A stretch of 64,000 nt of DNA from Macrostomum lignano (Eukaryota): the NCBI GenBank assembly GCA_002269645.1, contig NIVC01002870.1, positions 1 to 64,000 on the forward strand. Direction: 5' to 3'. The notes under the pieces are model-generated. The model did not search any database. It was not told where the DNA came from and saw only the letters and a list, made by a program, of their open reading frames with translations. Positions 1,181 to 55,464 of this stretch are shown one piece after another. How positions within the stretch are numbered: position 1 is the first letter of the stretch; each line of letters begins with the position of its first letter. A program made the translations under genes and the position numbers.

Positions 1181-6983
<5,803 letters not shown>

Positions 6984-25470: not shown

Positions 25471-27081
<1,611 letters not shown>

Positions 27082-28666: not shown

Positions 28667-45619
<16,953 letters not shown>

Positions 45620-46754: not shown

Positions 46755-47265
46755 AGTGTACACTGGGGATAGAAAAGCAAATCTCAACCTTGCAGCTCGC
46801 TAAGCCAATCAGCAAGCAAAATGACCGTCCAAGTGTACACTGGGGATAGAGATGCAAATCTATCTAACCCTCGCTAAACCAATCAGCGAGCAGAATGACC
46901 GTCCAAGTGTACACTGAGGATAGAGATGCAAATCTATCTAACCCTCGCTAAACCAATCAGCAAGCAAAATGACCGTCCAAGTGTACACTGAGGATAGAGA
47001 TGCAAATCTATCTAACCCTCGCTAAACCAATCAGCAAGCAGAATGACCGTCCAAGTGTACACTGAGGATAGAGATGCAAATCTATCTAACCCTCGCTAAA
47101 CCAATCAGCAAGCAGAATGACCGTCCAAGTGTACACTGAGGATAGAGATGCAAATCTATCTAACCCTCGCTAAACCAATCAGCGAGCAGAATGACCGTCC
47201 AAGTGTACACTGAGGATAGAGATGCAAATCTATCTAACCCTCGCTAAACCAATCAGTGAGCAGAA
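46755..47265. repeat. 74-bp tandem repeat, about 6.5 copies
   Basis: Unit aagtgtacactgaggatagagatgcaaatctatctaaccctcgctaaaccaatcagcaagcagaatgaccgtcc. No spacers. Confidence 0.93.
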
Positions 47266-47569
47266 TGGCATTAAGTGAGAAGCGCTCTTCTAAACCAGGT
47301 ACCACTCAGAAAAGACACATTCCAGTGGCATGATTATCAACTTACGGACAAAAAGCGAAGAAGGAAACTCGGATCGTAAACTTACATTACAGTTTAGAGT
47401 AAAAGCAGAATCATGAAAATATTCGCTAAAACAAATACAGCTAAGCTACCAGTAACGCGTATTTGTACCTAACTGATTGAATAATAAAAAATCAGCTTAA
47501 AAAGTAAAGCACTGTTATTAATGACTGTCGTGTTGCCCTAGTTCGTTCTATCGAAAAGTTCAGGCTGGA

Positions 47570-49172
47570 TTATTCCTTCGGCTGGTTGATGCGGCCGGCA
47601 AACAGCACACTGTTCGTGGCCTCATCCTTGATCAGCACCAGGAATGGCTCGGTGACAAAGAACGGCATCATCATTGGCATGCTGAAGCAGGCGATGGCAA
47701 CGGCGGTGGCCGCAGCGGCCTCGGCGCCCTCCTCGTTCACCTCCAGGCAGGCCTTGTGCACCACCTTGGACACGAACAGGTTCTCGGCGGTGCTGATACC
47801 GCTCAGGTCGGCGTGGCCGCGCTCGAACAGGCGCTTCACGCCCATGGCCGGCAGGTACTGGGGATCGCTCAGCGAGAACTGCGTCTCCACCTGCAGAGGC
47901 AAATTTTATTTTATTTAATATTCCTCTAGATCGATAATTAAGTTTACGCATAAACTTCCCACTGAGCCAGTGGGTCAGGTTTGTTATTCTGGGTCAGGCT
48001 AGGGTCATTCTTCATGTATTTTTAGGTCAGACAAGGTCATTCTGGGTCAGGCTAGGGTCATTCTTCATTTATTTCTAGGTCGGACAAGGTTATTCTGGGT
48101 CAGGCTAGGGTCATTCTTCATGTATTTCTAGGTCAGATAAGGTCATTCTGGATCAGGCTAGGGTCACTCTAGTTCAGGTTAAGCAGCACCAACAAAAGCA
48201 ACCCACCTTGAACCTGGGCAGATGCAGGTCGACCTCCTGCTCAGTGGCGGAGCCAGCAAGAGCCAGGATGTCCTCCAGACTGCCAACAGCTTGGAGAGCG
48301 GCGGACAGACCGTGGCGCTCAAACGGCAGCACGATGAGCATGCTGCAGCTGCCGCCGGCGAACGGCAGCTGGACAATTCTCAGACCGCGACCTTCGGCGT
48401 AGGGAAACTGCTGCGTCTGCTGCATCATCCGAACGGGAGACTGGCTGCCTGGCGCCGATTCAAACTGTCCATCGTACGTGCTCTCCGGGTTGAAGGTGTG
48501 CTTCCAGTCGCCTTTGAAATAGATGGCGTTCACCAGCACTAGGCGAGTGTTGGAGTCCAGGGAGCCTCTGTCGGGTACAATAGTTAATGCGAGCGCAGTT
48601 GTAAAGTGCATTTAGAGTACTAATAAGCTGACGAGGCAAATTTCGTCTATTACTCGAATACTTTATTATCCCTTTTTAACGCAAAATAAACGCACAAAAC
48701 AATAGCACTTTTTCTGGCCTTACTGAGCGAGCAGCTCCCGGATCTTGCTGCTGGTCTGCTGCTCCACCCACTGGTTGATGGCCTCTCTAGCAGCTTCGCA
48801 CTGCTGCTTGAAGTCCACACTGCCCAGCTCGGCTCCGTAGCTCTTGGCCAGGGTGCCGCTGAACTCCCCCTCGATGGCGAAGCTTCTCTCCGCGAACAGC
48901 CGATTGGCCACCGCCAGCTTCACGCCCTGACGTCCGCTGTTCAGCGCCGAGATCAGCCGGCCCATGTCCGAGTGCGGAGACTTCAGCTGGCTCAGATGCA
49001 GAGCCTGCGACAGCTCCGCCTCGGTCTCGGTCTTGGCTCCGGCCAGGGTCATAGCGAGGGCCACCTGCACAGAGGCTGGCGACAGAAACACATTCTCAGA
49101 CTTGTGCTGCTCGATCACCTGGTTCAGCAGCGACCAGGCGAAGCGGACGGCGCTCTCAGTTAGGCTGGACAT
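47570..49172 (-). CDS. Intracellular (clade-B/ov-serpin-like) serpin, copy A; reactive loop ...AIACF-SM
   Basis: Exons 49172-48724, 48567-48207, 47890-47570. Motifs ENVFLSPASV, VANRLF, INQWVEQQT, LVNAIYFKGDW, LPRFK, VNEEGAEAAAAT, EPFLVLI...LFAGRI. No signal peptide. Confidence 0.95.
47975..48170. repeat. 53-bp tandem repeat, about 3.7 copies, in serpin A intron 2
   Basis: Recurrent tctgggtcaggctagggtcattcttcat. Confidence 0.88.
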
Positions 49173-50293
49173 TCTCGGGATTGCTGCTGAGAAGAGGGAC
49201 GCTCTGAGCTTTAAAAATGCGATTGTTTAAGCAGATGCAGATTTTTTAAGTGGAGAACCGCACCTACAGAGGGGCTACATATATATTGTTTTGCCTAATG
49301 CCTATAACCAGACCACGCATACGACACGACGCCAAGTCTGGCTTGGTCCAGTCCAGTCCAGATTAGATATGCCTCCGCCGCCGCCCATGCCTTAAAAAAA
49401 CACAGTTATCCCTCCCTAGTCAAGTCAAGACAGTGCCAGGGCGAATGGAAAGAAAATAGGGGTTGGGGTTTCGGGTAGAAGGAAAGATAAGCGAGGCGCA
49501 AAGGCTTGGTTGGGTTGGCTGGGGTGGGGTGGGGCACACACGCCCGCCCCGTACACGGGAAATGTACATTGAGGCCGAATAGCCAACCCCCCACTATACG
49601 ATTCCACTCCTCCACTTTGCTAACACTGGCTGGACAATTTTAATCTTAACCCTATACTACGGTTGGGCGGCCCGTTAGAAAAGCCAGCTGGGACAACAGC
49701 AAATGAAATGAATTGAATGCCAATTTAAAGTCGCGTCTATTTGTCTGCCAGCCAGGTCCAGGTGACCATGCGCCTGCCTGCTTTCAAGGGTCTCTTTCAT
49801 ATTAAAAGAAGGCAATAAAATAAATTCTTACGAGTACGGAGTTACCATAATGACCAGTCATTTCATTTCACCCCGACCCCAGTGGAGATGATTAATTGCT
49901 TAATACTAACATTTATCTCAGTCTCTCCGAATTTCGAAACACCGTCAGAGAAACTGAAAGTAATAAGTTAAAGTACTCGAATAGATTGAGCAAACAGAAG
50001 GCAGCTGATTCTGCCTAATTTCTGCTGCTATTCTTTGTCGCCACCTGTGTATTTAAACTGTAAAATACAGCAAAATATGAGACTATATATAATACGTTTC
50101 TTTATGCACCATTGTTTAAACGTTATGAATATGAATTACTAGCTCGTAGCTACTTCAGTATCTTATTCAGTTGTTTAGAAAACGGTATATTTAAATTTTA
50201 CGGTGTGAAGTCAACACCACACCGTCAGCTAGTGAGCGATTGCCAAATCTCTAACGCTACAGTTTCAAATGGCAAAGTGTACTTAAGTTTAGC

Positions 50294-53200
50294 TTATTCG
50301 CTTGGCTGAGTAATTCTACCAGCAAACAGCACACAGCCCGTGCTTCTGTCCAAGATCAACACCAAGAAAGGTTCATTAACATTGAAGGTCACGCTGTCAT
50401 CCTCCAGTTTCGCGCAGTCTACAACACAAGTGGCGGTGGCTGCAGCAGCCTCGGCGCCCTCCTCGTTCACCTCCAGGCAGGCCTTGTGAACCACCTTGGA
50501 CACGAACAGGTCCCTGGAAGACTGGCTGATACCGCTGAGGTCAGCGCAGCCCTCCGTGAACAGGCGCTTCACGCCCATGGCTGGCAAGTACTGGGGATCG
50601 CTCAATGTAAACTGCGTTTCCACCTGCAAAGGAGAGGAAGGATTGGTTGCAGATGTGAGCTTGGCTTGGACTGAGCCAAATCTGGTTACGATGTGTCGGA
50701 ATCGGTCATTAACGATCATACCGCTGGGTCATGAAGTAGGCTAAATGCATACTGAACTTTGGGTGAATTGGATTTGATCTATTCAGGGTACATTACATCA
50801 ATTTACGATGATAACAGCATTACGGATACTTGCTTATATAAGCTATTTTTTCGGTAAGTTCTGTACACCCACTAGCTAATAAAGGCACTATCAATTGTAG
50901 GTAGCTGTATATGTGATCCAAATACATGTCTGTCAGAGAGCTCATGTTGCGATAAAATCCTGTTTGTAAGTTGTAACCATGCACGAGGGGAGATGTAACT
51001 CTCTTCTTTACGAGTACTGGCATTTTTTACGTAGAAACTAGTAAATAATTTGTCGACTGTATTATAGCAGTAAAAAGTTCATTAAAACCTCACTCCACTA
51101 TAGAAATTTAGTAAAGTAACGATACAGCTTGCTGAAAAGCCTTTCACAATATGTTTTCGTTGCTGCTTCTGCTGATCTTCTTGGCACGGAGCTCAATCAA
51201 TAGACTCATCAGCTGAGCAGCCCAACTACAACTTAGTGCACCATATGAGCATGAACAAGGATCCTGGTTTTGTACAGGTCAGTAAGACTGGAGTAAGACC
51301 GTCATTGGCCACAAGGAAAAATCTTATTGCTCTTCTGCCAGACCGAGTCCCGCTGCAACGCCTTAATCGGATGCCACAAAGACCCGGTGACTCTCTCGTG
51401 CGGCCTGCTGCAGATCAAAAGCACCTACTGGATTGACGCCTCAGACTTGCCGGAAAACCTATTAGAGAAGGTCTGCGTAATTTATGAGTCTATAACATTC
51501 CGACCATAAACCCTGACCCTAACCTAAATTGTCGGCAGTCAAATGGCTGGTAGTCAAATGCTTGACAGTCAAATATCGGGCTCCTGCAGTCTATAGGACT
51601 TAAATAATTCATTTTAATATCCATATCCTTGCTCCGTTCTTATTCCCAAACCAAACCAGACTGGATGACCTGCACTACTGGGTTACAGAGTCTGCTTGTG
51701 CTCTGCTATATGGCAAGGTATGGCAAATATTGCCCAGGCGGAAGACAGCCAACCGATGAGTTGAAGAAAATGGCTCTTTGTTCAAGTGTGTTCGACCGAC
51801 GGTGTGTTTGACCATTTTTGCGAAGCTTCTTTATGGTTTAAAGATACATTTAGCTACGGGTCCATCGATGAAGAAATGTCGCTTTAGCACAACCGCTGAA
51901 TTCACAGGACTATGCTCGCGTTCACAATGGCGGTCCACTAGGTAAGACAAGAATACCTCACTAATGTGAATTTCAGTGGTTGTGTTAAAGTGGCATTGCT
52001 TCATCGATGGCTACTGGAAGAAGAAATGTTTAGGAATTCGTCTGCCTTGTGGACAAACACTTTGGCGTCGCAAGTATCAGTTTGATGTGCCCTCACTGCA
52101 ATTCAAGATACACTCGGTATCTGCCGATTCAATAGAATCATGCAACTCTCTTCGGATGCTGCAGCCTGATAATTGTTATCCAAGTTTCTGATTAGTTAGT
52201 CTTTATAATTCCAACTCTTTTTTTGTTAGTAAACCGTTTCTAACATATGCAGCCAATACGCTCGTAATGAAAATTTACATGCATTCTTTATTCAAAATTT
52301 TATTAGTAAATTTAATATTTTTGACATCAAATCCTGCATTTTGTTAAGCTTTTCCGAGTTACCAGAATGGTAAGGAACATCTGAGTGAATTCAAATGGGT
52401 TTCCAATTCATCGTCAGAGCCGACAAAGCCTTTTTGCTCGTTTTATTCACCCGCGGGAATTATACACATTTAGTGCCAACCGATTTTTCATTTAAAGACA
52501 ACAGAGGCTTCCTTGTTAGAACGGAAAGACCTCCGTTCCTTGTCTGCTCCGGCCCTGCCGTTGTTGACTCTGCAGCTTTAGCCCTCCCCTCGATAGAATT
52601 GAGTCTCATCAGCTCAGTCCAGTAAGGTTGAGTTGATCTGAATAAACAGCTTCACTAAAACTGACTAAATTTTATCGGGCGGACGTCATTAGAAGCATGC
52701 GTGTGTTGCCTTTGCGTTCGTTCTTTGGGACAGACCAGCCATTTGGAACAGACAGACCTGTGCGTTCGTGCGACCCTGGTTGTCGGCCTTACTGCCAGCA
52801 TGTGTAGTGCGAAATTTTGAACCTCACTAATCATTCAGAGCGCGGACAAAGCCGGCTGGTCCATCTCGGGACACAATTTCGTTGTATAGGTCATAAAGTC
52901 AACCAGAAATACTCACCTTGAATCGAGGCAGGTGTAAGTCAACCTCTCGCGCCATAGCCTGACGCGCCAACTCCAAGATGTTGTCTAACCGAGCTTCAGA
53001 CTTTAGAGCCGCGTCCAGCTGGTGCCGCTCCTGCGGCAGGACTATTACCATGCTGCAGCTGTCACCAGCGAACGGCAGCTGGACAAGACGCAATCCGCGA
53101 CCTTCAGTGTAGAGAAAATCGCGTTTGTTCTGCATCATCCGCACGGGAGACTGGCTGCCCGGCACCGACTCGAACTGTCCATCGTAGGTGTCATCTCGGT

Positions 53201-54089
53201 CGAAGGGGTCCATCCAGTCGCCTTTGAAATAGATAGCGTTCACCAGCACAAAGCGAGAGTTGGTATCGAGAGAACCTCTGAAAGTGTTACATTGTTAGCT
53301 ATCTGTGATTAATTGAACCTACTTAAAAAGTTTTAAAATCAAAAAACGTTAACTTACTGCTTACTACTTAAGTTAATGACTTGAAAGACGTAATCAGGTT
53401 TTTTAAAGCATTTAAAAATCTTTACTGAATACACAGCCGTATTGAGAATATTCTGTGGTTTTGTATACAGTACGAAGTCGTGTCCTAAAGATTGAAGTAA
53501 CATGAAGGAGACATTGATTTACCTATTAGCTATTAGCTTAGCTAGCTTAGCTTAGCATTAGCTATTTACGGCTACAAGACCAATCTAACTGAGACGTTCT
53601 AAATCCAAGAGGTTAAATTTTCTAGCTTAGCTTAACTCACCGTGCGAGCAGCTCCCGGATCTTGCTGCTGGTCTGCTGCTCCACCCACTGGTTGATGGCC
53701 TCCCTAGCAGCCTCGCACTGCTGCTTGAAGTCCACACTGCCCAGTTCGGCTCCGTAGCTCTTGGCCAGGGTGCCGCTGAACTCCGCCTCGATGGCGAAGC
53801 TTCTCTCCGCGAACAGCCGGTTGGCCACCGCCAGCTTCACGCCCTGACGTCCGCTGTTCAGCGCCGAGATCAGCCGGCCCATGTCCGAGTGCGGAGACTT
53901 CAGCTGGCTCAGGTGCAGAGCCTGCGACAGCTCCGCCTCGGTCTCGGTCTTGGCTCCGGCCAGGGTCATGGCGAGGGCCACCTGCACAGAGGCTGGCGAC
54001 AGAAACACATTCTCAGACTTGTGCTGCTCGATCACCTGGTTCAGCAGCGACCAGGCGAAGCGGACGGCGCTCTCAGTTAGGCTGGACAT
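50294..54089 (-). CDS. Intracellular serpin, copy B; reactive loop ...TATCVVD-CAK
   Basis: Exons 54089-53641, 53277-52917, 50623-50294. Same intron positions and phases as copy A. Confidence 0.95.
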
Positions 54090-55464
54090 TCTCGGGATTG
54101 CAGTTTCTGCTGAAATGCACCGAGAAAATACAGTCAGTACAGCAGTCTTCGAAAATCGAAATTTCAGAAAATCACAAATGTACTTTCAACAGTTGCCCTA
54201 TCCATGGCCATGCACTTTATCATACCCATTTTATCGCATCTCAGTAACAAATAGGCAACTAGCTACTGGTTCCCTTGTTGGTCCCACTTACATTAAGTTA
54301 TGAAACCATTATGGAGTATTCCATTTTTTAAACAACAGATATCCTTTGGGGTATCCCTTAACCAACACCAAGTCTGTTTTAATCAACACAAAGTTCTAAA
54401 AAATTCGTCTATAAGTTCCCTGCACTTGTTGCTACTCGTAAACGACTTTGTTGGTCGTAAATTTTCGGAAAGCAGTCTTCAGTAAAATTTATTCATCGCT
54501 GACTTCATTCGTACACGGAATCATTATCAAGCATAGTTGCATGTCACCAGATGCATGAGTTCAGTTTCTAGTAGTTCACAAAGCTAATTCACGCTCTTAA
54601 TGCATTCGATGCGCACTGAATCTTAATGCATGGCGTTACACGTACGCGGCAGCTTTCAATCGAAGCGTTTTGCTCAGTCGTTGCTTTTTTGGCTTATTAG
54701 ACATCAAATACTATGACAACAATTGTGCATTGTTCTCACACTCTTGCTCGCCCTGACGCATTTAAAGTGAGGCATTTCGGTTTGGCGTTTGGCACCTTTG
54801 CGTGTATCCGCTTCAGGTCTATATACAAAAGTAATTAACTGGAAAGTCGATCTGTTGTTGAGTTCTGCTGATTTTTTGTTAATGAAGCAATTCGACTTCG
54901 AGTAGCAAACTGGCTGCCACCTTCACTACAGGGATACAGTGTCTGCCCGGCCATATTCCCGATTTCCAATGCACGTTGAATCACGCTGATCTGTGAGTGA
55001 ACACTGACTAGTTTATCGGTTCTCAAATTGTATGTCGTGTTTCTCAACGCCCAAAATCTGGACTAACGTGACTTAGCAAATTATTAAAAGTTTTCTTACG
55101 ATGCTGTAGCTAAAACCAAGACAAGGCGCCAAGCATGCAAAGGCGCCAAAATGCTAAATAGGTAACAAACAAAATGGGCACCGAAATGCCTGGTAACCGA
55201 TGTTTTCGACTCAAACCCTGATGCTGAGTACTTCCGATATACAATCTACCGCAATAGTACATTGTTTAGTCAAGGACTACTCAAGTTGAGTCAAGTATGA
55301 ATAGTACAAAAGTCTAGGATGCAGGTTTTACCGAAAATACAGTAAAAATACAGGAGAATAGAGGTTTTCATTTTTTCAGCACAAAATTTGTTATTGCTTT
55401 TGATAGAAGGTAGACCCAATGCTTATCTTTTGATATGTCTTGCCTTTTAGTACATGTTGGGTGC

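What the first reader, a model, noticed from the sequence alone, without database searches (positions are those of the whole stretch)
50385..50470. Serpin B reactive loop aligns register-for-register with the viral caspase inhibitor CrmA (Asp-Cys-Ala)
Seen: the loop reads VNEEGAEAAAATATCVVD-CAKL, with the Asp codon at 50417-50419. Known: cowpox CrmA reads VNEEYTEAAAATCALVAD-CAST; its P1 Asp is the 16th residue from the first hinge Glu, and it inhibits caspase-1/-8 and granzyme B. Here the Asp is also the 16th residue and is followed by the same Cys-Ala. The protein has no signal peptide, so it is cytosolic, where caspases act. The paralog has a conventional F-S loop. Inference: a candidate endogenous, independently evolved caspase-inhibiting (anti-apoptotic or anti-inflammatory) serpin in an invertebrate. 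Caveat: the standard 17-residue count makes Cys the P1 residue.
Basis: partly seen in the sequence, partly recalled or inferred. Interest (0 to 1): 0.8.

Follow-up and report, generated by a model that had tools for sequence, protein, structure and literature searches.

The report
Flatworm serpin with Asp-Cys reactive loop
The site is the bait loop of an intact, signal-peptide-less protease inhibitor (serpin) gene of the flatworm Macrostomum lignano, and its aspartate sits exactly where poxvirus caspase-blocking serpins carry theirs, so a caspase-inhibiting role is plausible but rests on sequence alone.

Summary
Window 50294-54089 (minus strand) holds a 3-exon, 379-aa serpin gene ("B") of Macrostomum lignano. 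A 376-aa paralog ("A", 47570-49172) lies next to it in tandem.

- **Loop position.** B's loop has Asp339 (GAC, 50419-50417) as the 16th residue from the hinge Glu324, followed by Cys340-Ala341. A has Cys-Phe-Ser at the same positions.
- **CrmA register.** Tool output confirms that the Asp of CrmA (PDB 1f0c_A) is also the 16th residue. Two CrmA-family serpins on poxvirus-sized viral contigs read Cys-Val-Ala-Asp at positions 13-16; B reads Cys-Val-Val-Asp.
- **Rarity.** Among 272 loops of cellular relatives, Cys at position 13 occurs 0 times and Asp at position 16 occurs twice.
- **Convergence.** B's body is clade-B-like (best hit human SERPINB1, about 40% identity), not CrmA-like, so the likeness is convergent.

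Against the caspase reading:
- The canonical 17-residue count makes Cys340 the P1 residue, aligned with SERPINB1's P1 Cys344.
- No ortholog of B outside M. lignano was found. The three genomic copies are nearly identical, so conservation is untested.
- The loop peptide alone has no significant database match.

Verdict: a real inhibitory, intracellular-type serpin. The caspase-type (Asp-P1) reading is about 0.4, the canonical Cys-P1 reading about 0.3. It is a new member of a known kind.

The parts
53641..54089 (-). Serpin B exon 1 (Met1 to the first two bases of codon 150); the ATG is at 54089-54087
   Evidence: Donor GTGAGT lies after 53641. The joined exons give an uninterrupted 379-aa ORF. 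The upstream in-frame sequence has a stop and no earlier ATG.
52917..53277 (-). Serpin B exon 2
   Evidence: The acceptor (CAG) and donor (GTGAGT) were read. tblastn gives 100% identity to B residues 151-270.
50294..50623 (-). Serpin B exon 3 (strand s5A, hinge, reactive-centre loop, C-terminus, stop codon)
   Evidence: The Pfam Serpin domain PF00079 covers residues 8-377 with E 3.5e-109.
50387..50470 (-). Hinge plus reactive-centre loop of serpin B (Val322 to Thr349); Glu324 (P17) is at 50464-50462
   Evidence: The distal loop 337-350 has pLDDT below 50 in the AF2 model, so it is flexible or exposed.
50417..50419 (-). Asp339 codon (GAC), 16th residue from the hinge Glu; candidate P1 in the CrmA-type 16-residue register
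   Evidence: Identical in all three M. lignano loci. Same register as the Asp of PDB 1f0c_A and of L007/L009.
50414..50416 (-). Cys340 codon (TGC), 17th residue; P1 by the canonical count
   Evidence: Aligns without gaps to Cys344 of human SERPINB1. Cys occupies this position in 24.6% of 272 relatives' loops.
50396..50407 (-). Leu343-Glu-Asp-Asp346, a second acidic motif on the prime side of the loop
   Evidence: Its significance is unknown.
47570..49172 (-). Serpin A, the tandem paralog. Exons 49172-48724, 48567-48207 and 47890-47570 encode 376 aa. Its loop has Cys338-Phe339-Ser340 (47689-47681).
   Evidence: The loop is fully conserved in a transcript ortholog from another species (P0002).
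53636..54101 (-). B side of a 466-bp tract that is 97.9% identical to A 48719-49184 (exon 1 plus 12 bp upstream and 5 bp of the intron)
   Evidence: blastn of the two gene regions. dS is 0.03-0.07 in exon 1 against 0.64-1.0 in exons 2-3.

Best explanation
Serpin B is an intact, intracellular-type (clade-B-like, signal-less) inhibitory serpin of Macrostomum lignano. It would work by the standard serpin suicide-substrate mechanism. A protease cuts the exposed loop, the hinge (Glu324-Glu-Gly-Ala-Glu-Ala4-Thr) inserts into beta-sheet A, and the enzyme is trapped as an acyl intermediate.

The most likely reading of the loop is the 16-residue register. In that reading Asp339 is P1, Cys-Val-Val occupy P4-P2 and Cys340-Ala341 occupy P1'-P2'. 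This would make B an endogenous inhibitor of an Asp-specific cysteine protease, most plausibly a caspase, that arose by convergence with the poxvirus CrmA/SPI-2 loop.

Shown: the gene, fold, hinge, register, rarity of the loop and absence of a signal peptide. Inferred: the scissile bond, the target and the biological role.
For: - **Serpin identity.** Pfam Serpin E 3.5e-109. AF2 model pLDDT 90.8 with a flexible distal loop. The hinge is identical in type to the inhibitory SERPINB3/B4 and SERPINB1.
- **CrmA register.** Asp339 is the 16th residue from the hinge Glu, as is Asp303 of PDB 1f0c_A 'ICE inhibitor'. It is also the 16th in two CrmA-family minimal serpins on viral contigs (L007, L009), whose positions 13-16 read Cys-Val-Ala-Asp against Cys-Val-Val-Asp in B.
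- **Literature on loop length.** crmA, C1 inhibitor and alpha2-antiplasmin use 16-residue loops (PMC4493575).
- **Precedent for the 16th residue as P1.** In the closest scaffold, serpin B1, the 16th residue (Phe343) serves as an alternative P1 next to Cys344 (PMC11327461).
- **Rarity.** Among 272 loops of non-M. lignano relatives, Asp at the 16th position occurs in 0.7%, Cys at the 13th in 0%, and any acidic residue at the 16th or 17th in about 1-3%.
- **Compartment.** There is no signal peptide and two loop cysteines, which fits a reducing cytosol.
- **Candidate targets exist.** M. lignano and other flatworms encode caspases (PMC11463336).
- **Selection on B.** dN/dS is 0.2-0.37 against A in exons 2-3, and the ORF is intact at all three loci.
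Against: - The 17-residue rule holds for nearly all serpins. It makes Cys340 the P1 residue, in the same column as the P1 Cys344 of SERPINB1.
- Position P3 carries Val, not the Glu that most caspases prefer (my own knowledge of caspase substrate preference, not checked here). The CrmA family also has Val at P3.
- B's loop is two residues longer than CrmA's on the prime side.
- The loop peptide alone finds nothing in the PDB at E <= 10. CrmA is not among the top 60 sequence hits or top 50 structure hits.
- There is no cross-species conservation evidence. The three copies differ by dS 0.00-0.05, and no ortholog was recovered.
- The match at positions 13-14 to L007/L009 was noticed after the fact.
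Confidence: 0.4

Rival explanations
1. Canonical register. Cys340 (17th residue) is P1 and Asp339 is only P2. Serpin B would then be a SERPINB1-like cytoprotective inhibitor of elastase-like or other serine proteases that accept a small P1 residue, and the Asp would be incidental or would tune selectivity.
For: - The best PDB hit is human SERPINB1 (4ga7, E 7.6e-78), and its Phe343-Cys344 aligns without gaps to Asp339-Cys340.
- Cys is at the 17th position in 63 of 130 loops of the top word-index hits and in 24.6% of 272 loops overall.
- The loop length up to P1 is 'almost always 17' residues (PMC4493575).
- Cys344 is the P1 residue of serpin B1 for elastase-like enzymes (PMC11327461).
Against: - An acidic P2 residue is very rare in relatives: 2 Asp among 272 loops at the 16th position.
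- The Cys-rich sample is dominated by vertebrate SERPINB1 orthologs, so the shared Cys may be coincidence.
- This reading does not explain the Cys-Val-x-Asp likeness to CrmA-family loops.
Confidence: 0.3
2. Cross-class inhibitor of papain-like lysosomal cysteine proteases (SERPINB3/SRP-6-like cytoprotection). A cathepsin would bind Val338 or Val337 in its S2 pocket and cut after Asp339 or Val338.
For: - Intracellular serpins that inhibit cathepsins K, L and S or calpain are established: SCCA1/serpin B3, hurpin and C. elegans SRP-6 (PMC7863939).
- B's hinge (Gly-Ala-Glu-Ala4-Thr) is identical to that of SERPINB3/B4 in the alignment.
- Two valines precede the Asp.
- From my own knowledge, unverified here: flatworms are rich in cathepsins, and SCCA1 is cut by cathepsin S one residue before its canonical P1.
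Against: - From my own knowledge: Asp is a poor P1 residue for most papain-like enzymes.
- No specific sequence likeness to the SERPINB3 distal loop was seen.
Confidence: 0.12
3. The distinctive loop has no dedicated target. B would be a drifting or redundant duplicate, or a non-inhibitory serpin, and the Asp would be a chance outcome of fast loop evolution after duplication.
For: - No B ortholog was recovered, although the A ortholog was.
- Serpin loops diverge fast between paralogs. The A and B loops cannot be aligned at the nucleotide level beyond the hinge.
- Direct expression evidence for B was not obtained.
Against: - The ORF and splice sites are intact at three loci.
- dN/dS is 0.2-0.37 over exons 2-3, at a dS of 0.64-1.0.
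- The hinge is of inhibitory type.
- Public gene models with a 5' extension before the ATG suggest that transcripts exist (inference).
Confidence: 0.08

Closest known systems
Human SERPINB1 (leukocyte elastase inhibitor, MNEI; PDB 4ga7, and horse 1hle)
   Same: - It is the best-scoring solved relative (E 7.6e-78, about 40% identity, end-to-end alignment).
- It has no signal peptide or N-/C-terminal extensions.
- It has the same hinge type.
- It has Cys at the 17th loop position.
- It has two adjacent candidate reactive residues at the 16th and 17th positions (PMC11327461).
   Different: - The 16th residue is Phe in SERPINB1 and Asp in B.
- B's loop is two residues longer on the prime side.
- B has a 3-exon flatworm gene structure.
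- Orthology is not implied.
Cowpox virus CrmA and the poxvirus SPI-2 family (PDB 1f0c, 1c8o, 1m93; viral-contig serpins L007 and L009)
   Same: - Asp is at the 16th position from the hinge Glu (PMC4493575).
- Val is at the 14th position.
- Cys is at the 13th position in L007/L009.
- Small residues follow the Asp, with Ala at the 18th position in 1c8o_B.
- Both act inside cells.
   Different: - CrmA-family proteins are 'minimal' serpins of 334-341 aa, whereas B is a full 379-aa serpin.
- CrmA has Tyr, not Gly, at the third hinge position.
- Whole-protein identity to L007/L009 is 28-29%.
- CrmA is not among B's top sequence or structure matches.
- B's prime side is two residues longer.
- Caspase inhibition is shown experimentally for CrmA and is untested for B.
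Human SERPINB9 (PI-9; PDB 8zcr)
   Same: It is an intracellular clade B serpin and a solved relative (E 1.9e-58). It has an acidic reactive centre and is an endogenous inhibitor of granzyme B and, more weakly, caspase-1 (PMC2213432, PMC11222584).
   Different: From my own knowledge, its acidic P1 is Glu in the canonical 17-residue register. It is a vertebrate immune-cell protein.
Invertebrate or parasite serpins with predicted or shown P1 Asp: Myxobolus cerebralis Mc-S3/4/5 and Nosema bombycis NbSPN14
   Same: They are non-viral serpins whose loop Asp was read as P1 and linked to caspases. For Mc-S the evidence is in silico only (PMC8007001). For NbSPN14 there is cell-based evidence against the silkworm caspase BmICE (PMC11741654).
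   Different: They are parasite proteins aimed at, or discussed in relation to, host processes. NbSPN14 has a signal peptide. B is an endogenous gene of a free-living flatworm. Sequence relatedness to B was not tested.

Membership tests
Serpin superfamily (Pfam PF00079), inhibitory type | Serpin domain over the full length | tested here: met
   PF00079 E 3.5e-109, residues 8-377 matching 3-370 of the 370-position profile. There are 195 PDB serpin hits at E <= 1e-10.
Serpin superfamily (Pfam PF00079), inhibitory type | Serpin fold with an exposed, mobile reactive-centre loop | tested here: met
   The AF2 model has pLDDT 90.8 and pTM 0.88, and residues 337-350 fall below 50. TM-scores to solved serpins are 0.85-0.92. 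The model came out loop-inserted, so it says nothing about the native loop conformation.
Serpin superfamily (Pfam PF00079), inhibitory type | Inhibitory hinge: Glu at P17, Gly at P15, small residues at P14 and P12-P9 | tested here: met
   Glu324-Glu-Gly-Ala-Glu-Ala-Ala-Ala-Ala-Thr. The type is the same as in the inhibitory SERPINB3/B4 in the alignment.
Serpin superfamily (Pfam PF00079), inhibitory type | Formation of a covalent complex with a target protease | not testable with these tools
   This needs observation of the protein itself.
Intracellular (clade-B-like / ov-serpin-type) serpins | No cleavable N-terminal signal peptide and no N- or C-terminal extension | tested here: met
   Met1 aligns with residue 1 of SERPINB3/B4, and the alignment runs to residue 377 of 379. 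The upstream frame is closed with no earlier ATG. No signal-peptide predictor was available.
Intracellular (clade-B-like / ov-serpin-type) serpins | Closest relatives are clade B serpins | tested here: met
   The top named hits are leukocyte elastase inhibitors (SERPINB1) at 39-43% identity. The top PDB hits are SERPINB1, B3/B4 and PAI-2.
Intracellular (clade-B-like / ov-serpin-type) serpins | Phylogenetic membership of vertebrate clade B | not tested
   No phylogeny was built. Clade B is defined for vertebrates (PMC4136820), so only 'clade-B-like' is claimed.
CrmA/SPI-2-type caspase-inhibiting serpins | Asp at the reactive centre in a 16-residue register | tested here: met
   Asp339 is the 16th residue. 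It is also the 16th in 1f0c_A and in L007/L009. Whether the bond after it is the one cut cannot be tested here.
CrmA/SPI-2-type caspase-inhibiting serpins | Minimal serpin architecture (about 334-341 aa) and closest sequence relation to poxvirus SPI-2 | tested here: not met
   B is 379 aa with a full-length clade-B-like body. Identity to L007/L009 is 28-29%. BFVD viral serpins share 12-26% identity. CrmA is absent from the top PDB lists.
CrmA/SPI-2-type caspase-inhibiting serpins | Inhibition of caspases | not testable with these tools
   No tool addresses activity.

The most novel reading that the evidence does not exclude
A free-living, highly regenerative flatworm encodes an endogenous cytosolic serpin. 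Its loop would have converged on the poxvirus CrmA/SPI-2 solution: Asp P1 in a 16-residue register with Cys/Val at P4/P3. The serpin would restrain its own caspases. It might do so with a second, adjacent reactive residue (Cys340) for serine proteases, as in SERPINB1, and with redox control through the loop cysteines.
Probability: 0.35. Interest if true: 0.7.

Novelty: new member of a known kind. Interest (0 to 1): 0.45.

Why it matters
Serpins that block caspases are known from poxviruses and a few pathogens. In animals the endogenous examples are weak or indirect (PI-9, SERPINB1). Caspase control in animals is otherwise attributed mainly to IAP-type proteins (my own knowledge).

A dedicated, endogenous Asp-P1 serpin in a flatworm would be a clear case of convergent loop evolution between a host-type serpin and viral serpins. 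It would also add a candidate regulator of cell death in a stem-cell and regeneration model.

If Cys340 is instead the reactive residue, the gene is an ordinary SERPINB1-like cytoprotective inhibitor. The finding would then have only annotation value, because the public gene models of this locus are fused or chimeric.

Tried and rejected
1. **P0123 as a counter-example.** The public protein P0123 (B body with the A-type loop) seemed to show that the Asp loop is missing at a third locus. This was rejected. The model spans both genes in L001, where a separate B exon 3 with the Asp loop is present. A 41-nt identical run at the hinge probably explains the chimera.
2. **Orthologs of B, to test conservation.** The word-index search and the exhaustive representative search returned only M. 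lignano copies or fusions (P0001, P0121-P0127) and one A-type ortholog (P0002). No B ortholog was found.
3. **CrmA as a named hit of B.** It is not in the top 60 for the whole protein or for the C-terminal 70 aa. The 24-aa loop peptide found nothing at E <= 10. CrmA is not in the top 50 structural matches, and the viral fold library gave only generic serpin matches. CrmA letters were obtained only indirectly, with the viral-contig serpin L007 as query.
4. **Horizontal transfer between poxvirus and flatworm.** Rejected, because the body of B is far closer to animal clade B serpins (39-43% identity) than to viral ones (28-29%).
5. **Alternative loop-cassette exons.** No mutually exclusive loop exons of the kind I recall from some insect serpin genes are present. 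tblastn finds only one exon 3 per gene.
6. **Literature.** The primary CrmA structure, CrmA loop-length and SCCA1 cleavage-site papers are not held. No paper mentions the three Mlig gene identifiers. The only Macrostomum serpin mention is a single sequence used in a helminth serpin tree (PMC7437470).
Full report
**1. What is at the coordinates**

The window is genomic DNA of the flatworm Macrostomum lignano. The encoded proteins match GenBank entries BOX15_Mlig023593g1/g2 apart from a four-residue 5' extension in those models.

On the minus strand lie two tandem three-exon serpin genes with GT-AG introns:
- Serpin B: exons 54089-53641, 53277-52917 and 50623-50294, encoding 379 aa.
- Serpin A: exons 49172-48724, 48567-48207 and 47890-47570, encoding 376 aa.

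Both match Pfam Serpin over their full length, with E 3.5e-109 for B and 8.2e-113 for A.

The peptide quoted in the finding is encoded exactly as stated. V-N-E-E-G begins at 50470, and the Asp codon GAC is at 50419-50417. Counting the first hinge Glu (Glu324) as residue 1, Asp339 is the 16th, Cys340 the 17th and Ala341 the 18th. Serpin A has Cys338, Phe339 and Ser340 at these positions.

**2. Is it a working, intracellular, inhibitory serpin?**

- The hinge (Glu-Glu-Gly-Ala-Glu-Ala4-Thr) is of the inhibitory type. It is the same as in SERPINB3/B4 in the alignment.
- An AlphaFold2 model built on 56 homologs has pLDDT 90.8, and only residues 337-350 fall below 50.
- The model superposes on solved serpins with TM-scores of 0.85-0.92. 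It came out in the loop-inserted state: the best matches are latent or cleaved serpins, and residues 326-337 form a strand. It therefore does not inform on the native loop.
- Met1 aligns with residue 1 of signal-less clade B serpins, and the alignment runs to residue 377 of 379.
- The upstream reading frame closes 33 codons before the ATG with no other ATG. No signal peptide or terminal extension is encoded.
- The loop carries two cysteines (336 and 340), which fits a reducing compartment.
- 'Cytosolic' is therefore likely. However, signal-less serpins of parasitic flatworms are found in secretions and vesicles (PMC7437470).

**3. Copies, age and selection**

The same B-A pair occurs at two further M. 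lignano loci, L001 (NIVC01000264) and L004 (NIVC01000052), downstream of RMI1 and TMEM220 genes. B's loop is identical at all three loci. The copies differ by dS 0.00-0.05, so this identity carries no information on constraint.

One public protein, P0123, appears to join a B body to the A loop. Its model spans both genes, and a normal B exon 3 lies inside it. The two genes share a 41-nt identical run at the hinge. It is an annotation or assembly chimera, not a locus that lacks the Asp.

Between A and B the exons differ sharply in divergence:

| Region | dS | dN/dS | Note |
|---|---|---|---|
| Exon 1 | 0.03-0.07 | not quoted (too few changes) | lies in a 466-bp tract of 97.9% identity that ends 12 bp before the ATG and 5 bp into the intron |
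| Exons 2-3 | 0.64-1.0 | 0.2-0.37 | no such tract |

An A-type transcript from another species (P0002; Logan runs SRR28338164/5) is closer to A than B is in exons 2-3. Its loop is identical to A's, with exon 3 dN/dS 0.04. The duplication is therefore older than that species split. Exon 1 has been homogenised since, and B has stayed under purifying selection.

No B-type ortholog was recovered in either protein search.

**4. Which residue is the reactive centre?**

*For Cys340 (canonical register)*
- The length from P17 to P1 is 'almost always 17 residues' (PMC4493575).
- The best-scoring solved relative is human SERPINB1 (4ga7, E 7.6e-78). Its Phe343-Cys344 aligns without gaps to Asp339-Cys340.
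- Cys344 is the P1 of SERPINB1 for elastase-like enzymes (PMC11327461).
- Cys occupies the 17th position in 24.6% of 272 loops of relatives.

*For Asp339 (16-residue register)*
- The same paper lists crmA, C1 inhibitor and alpha2-antiplasmin as 16-residue exceptions.
- I tested the CrmA comparison without the finding's letters. A scan of viral contigs with the alignment of B's relatives returned two 334-aa serpins, L007 and L009, on contigs of 144,575 and 134,721 bp.
- L007 aligns from residue 1 to the loop with PDB 1f0c_A and 1c8o_A, 'ICE inhibitor', that is CrmA (E about 1e-55).
- In that tool output, CrmA's Asp303 is the 16th residue from its first hinge Glu.
- In L007 and L009 the Asp is also the 16th, and positions 13-16 read Cys-Val-Ala-Asp. 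B reads Cys-Val-Val-Asp.
- In 272 loops of non-M. lignano cellular relatives, Cys at position 13 occurs 0 times, Asp at position 16 twice (0.7%) and Val at position 14 in 20.6%. Acidic residues at positions 16 or 17 are rare in both surveys.
- SERPINB1 shows that the 16th residue (Phe343) can act as P1 in this scaffold.

*Limits of the likeness*
- The crystallised CrmA chain reads Asp-Ser-Ala. Only the Ala after the Asp is confirmed as shared.
- B's prime side is two residues longer than that of CrmA or L007.
- The hinge-to-Asp identity between B and CrmA (11 of 17 residues) is no higher than the hinge-to-Cys identity between B and SERPINB1 (12 of 18), by my count.
- The loop peptide alone has no PDB match at E <= 10.
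- CrmA does not appear in the top lists for B by sequence or by fold.
- The match at positions 13-14 was seen after the fact.

**5. Mechanism and weights**

The serpin trap mechanism itself is well supported (about 0.85 that B is a functional inhibitor). For the target I weigh the readings as follows.

| Reading | Weight |
|---|---|
| Asp339 as P1, Asp-specific cysteine protease (most plausibly a caspase) | about 0.4 |
| Cys340 as P1, SERPINB1-like serine protease inhibitor | about 0.3 |
| Papain-like cathepsin inhibitor, with a Val in S2 | about 0.12 |
| No dedicated target | about 0.08 |

- **Caspase reading.** An Asp at that position is roughly a hundred-fold rarer under the canonical reading. 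The non-prime side mirrors CrmA-family loops, and M. lignano has caspases (PMC11463336). The low prior for caspase-directed serpins keeps this well short of certainty.
- **Cathepsin reading.** Precedents are SCCA1, hurpin and SRP-6 (PMC7863939).
- **Both sites.** Asp339 and Cys340 could both be used, as the adjacent pair is in SERPINB1.

**6. Comparison with what is known, and novelty**

B is a member of the serpin superfamily and is clade-B-like. It is not a member of the CrmA/SPI-2 family, because the body architecture and sequence relation tests are not met. Any functional likeness is convergent.

The idea of non-viral serpins with a P1 Asp aimed at caspases is already in the literature:
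- Myxozoan Mc-S3/4/5, predicted in silico (PMC8007001).
- Nosema NbSPN14 against the silkworm caspase BmICE (PMC11741654).
- PI-9, a weak endogenous caspase-1 inhibitor (PMC2213432).

I file the finding as a new member of a known kind. It has moderate interest (0.45) because the hypothesis is specific and can be checked with descriptive data.

**7. Unresolved points**

- The scissile bond, the target, expression of B, and conservation of the Asp outside M. lignano.
- The identity of the species behind P0002.
- The identity of the two viral contigs. I take them to be yatapoxviruses from their lengths, which is my own recollection and not a tool result.

Noticed in passing
window 48719-49184 and 53636-54101: The two serpin paralogs share a 466-bp tract of 97.9% identity. 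It coincides almost exactly with exon 1 (12 bp before the ATG to 5 bp into the intron), while promoters and introns cannot be aligned. dS is 0.03-0.07 in exon 1 against 0.64-1.0 in exons 2-3. This looks like exon-limited gene conversion.
   Followed up: partly
L001 10001-16333; proteins P0123, P0125, P0126, P0127: Public gene models of this locus are chimeric or fused. P0123 joins the B body to the A loop, and the 724-782-aa models join B and A. The genome has two separate genes. A 41-nt identical run at the hinge (aa 316-329) may be the crossing point.
   Followed up: yes
window 1-47300 (e.g. 40200-42679, 43503-45142, 25505-27031, 30538-31727, 5499-6533): There is an extraordinary density of minisatellite arrays: about 30 arrays, mostly with periods of 14-23 bp and up to 2.5 kb long, plus long (GACA)n/(ACAG)n tracts. 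They account for the blocks of extreme GC and AT skew in the composition profile.
   Followed up: no
window 31732-32868 and 35485-36507 (+): Two long ORFs carry cadherin domains (Pfam PF00028, E 1e-10 and 2e-27). They are probably exons of one cadherin gene whose introns hold the satellite arrays.
   Followed up: no
window 50396-50407 (-): A second acidic motif, Leu343-Glu-Asp-Asp346 followed by Ser, lies 4-7 residues after Asp339 on the prime side of serpin B's loop. This gives four acidic residues within eight positions. Its role is unknown.
   Followed up: no
L002 25-1155, L003 25-1155 (Logan SRR28338164/5): An intron-less transcript from another species encodes an ortholog of serpin A. Its reactive loop is identical to A's (exon 3 dN/dS 0.04), whereas no ortholog of serpin B was recovered from the same or any other source.
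   Followed up: partly
serpin B model mb30d07817ecb, residues 326-337: AlphaFold2 placed the hinge and proximal loop as a beta-strand. The model's best PDB matches are latent or cleaved serpins, for example cleaved horse LEI at rmsd 1.4 Å. The prediction therefore shows the relaxed state, not the native stressed state.
   Followed up: no
window 50624-52916; L004 11190-13205; L001 11192-13089: Intron 2 of serpin B is 2293, 2016 and 1898 bp at the three M. lignano loci, against 316 bp in serpin A. A 53-bp tandem repeat sits in A's intron 2 (47986-48170), and a 74-bp repeat array (46755-47267) lies just downstream of A.
   Followed up: no
PDB chain 1c8o_B / 1m93: The crystallised CrmA chain reads Asp-Ser-Ala at loop positions 16-18, so it has Ser where the finding expected Cys. 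Whether this reflects an engineered construct could not be checked with the tools.
   Followed up: no
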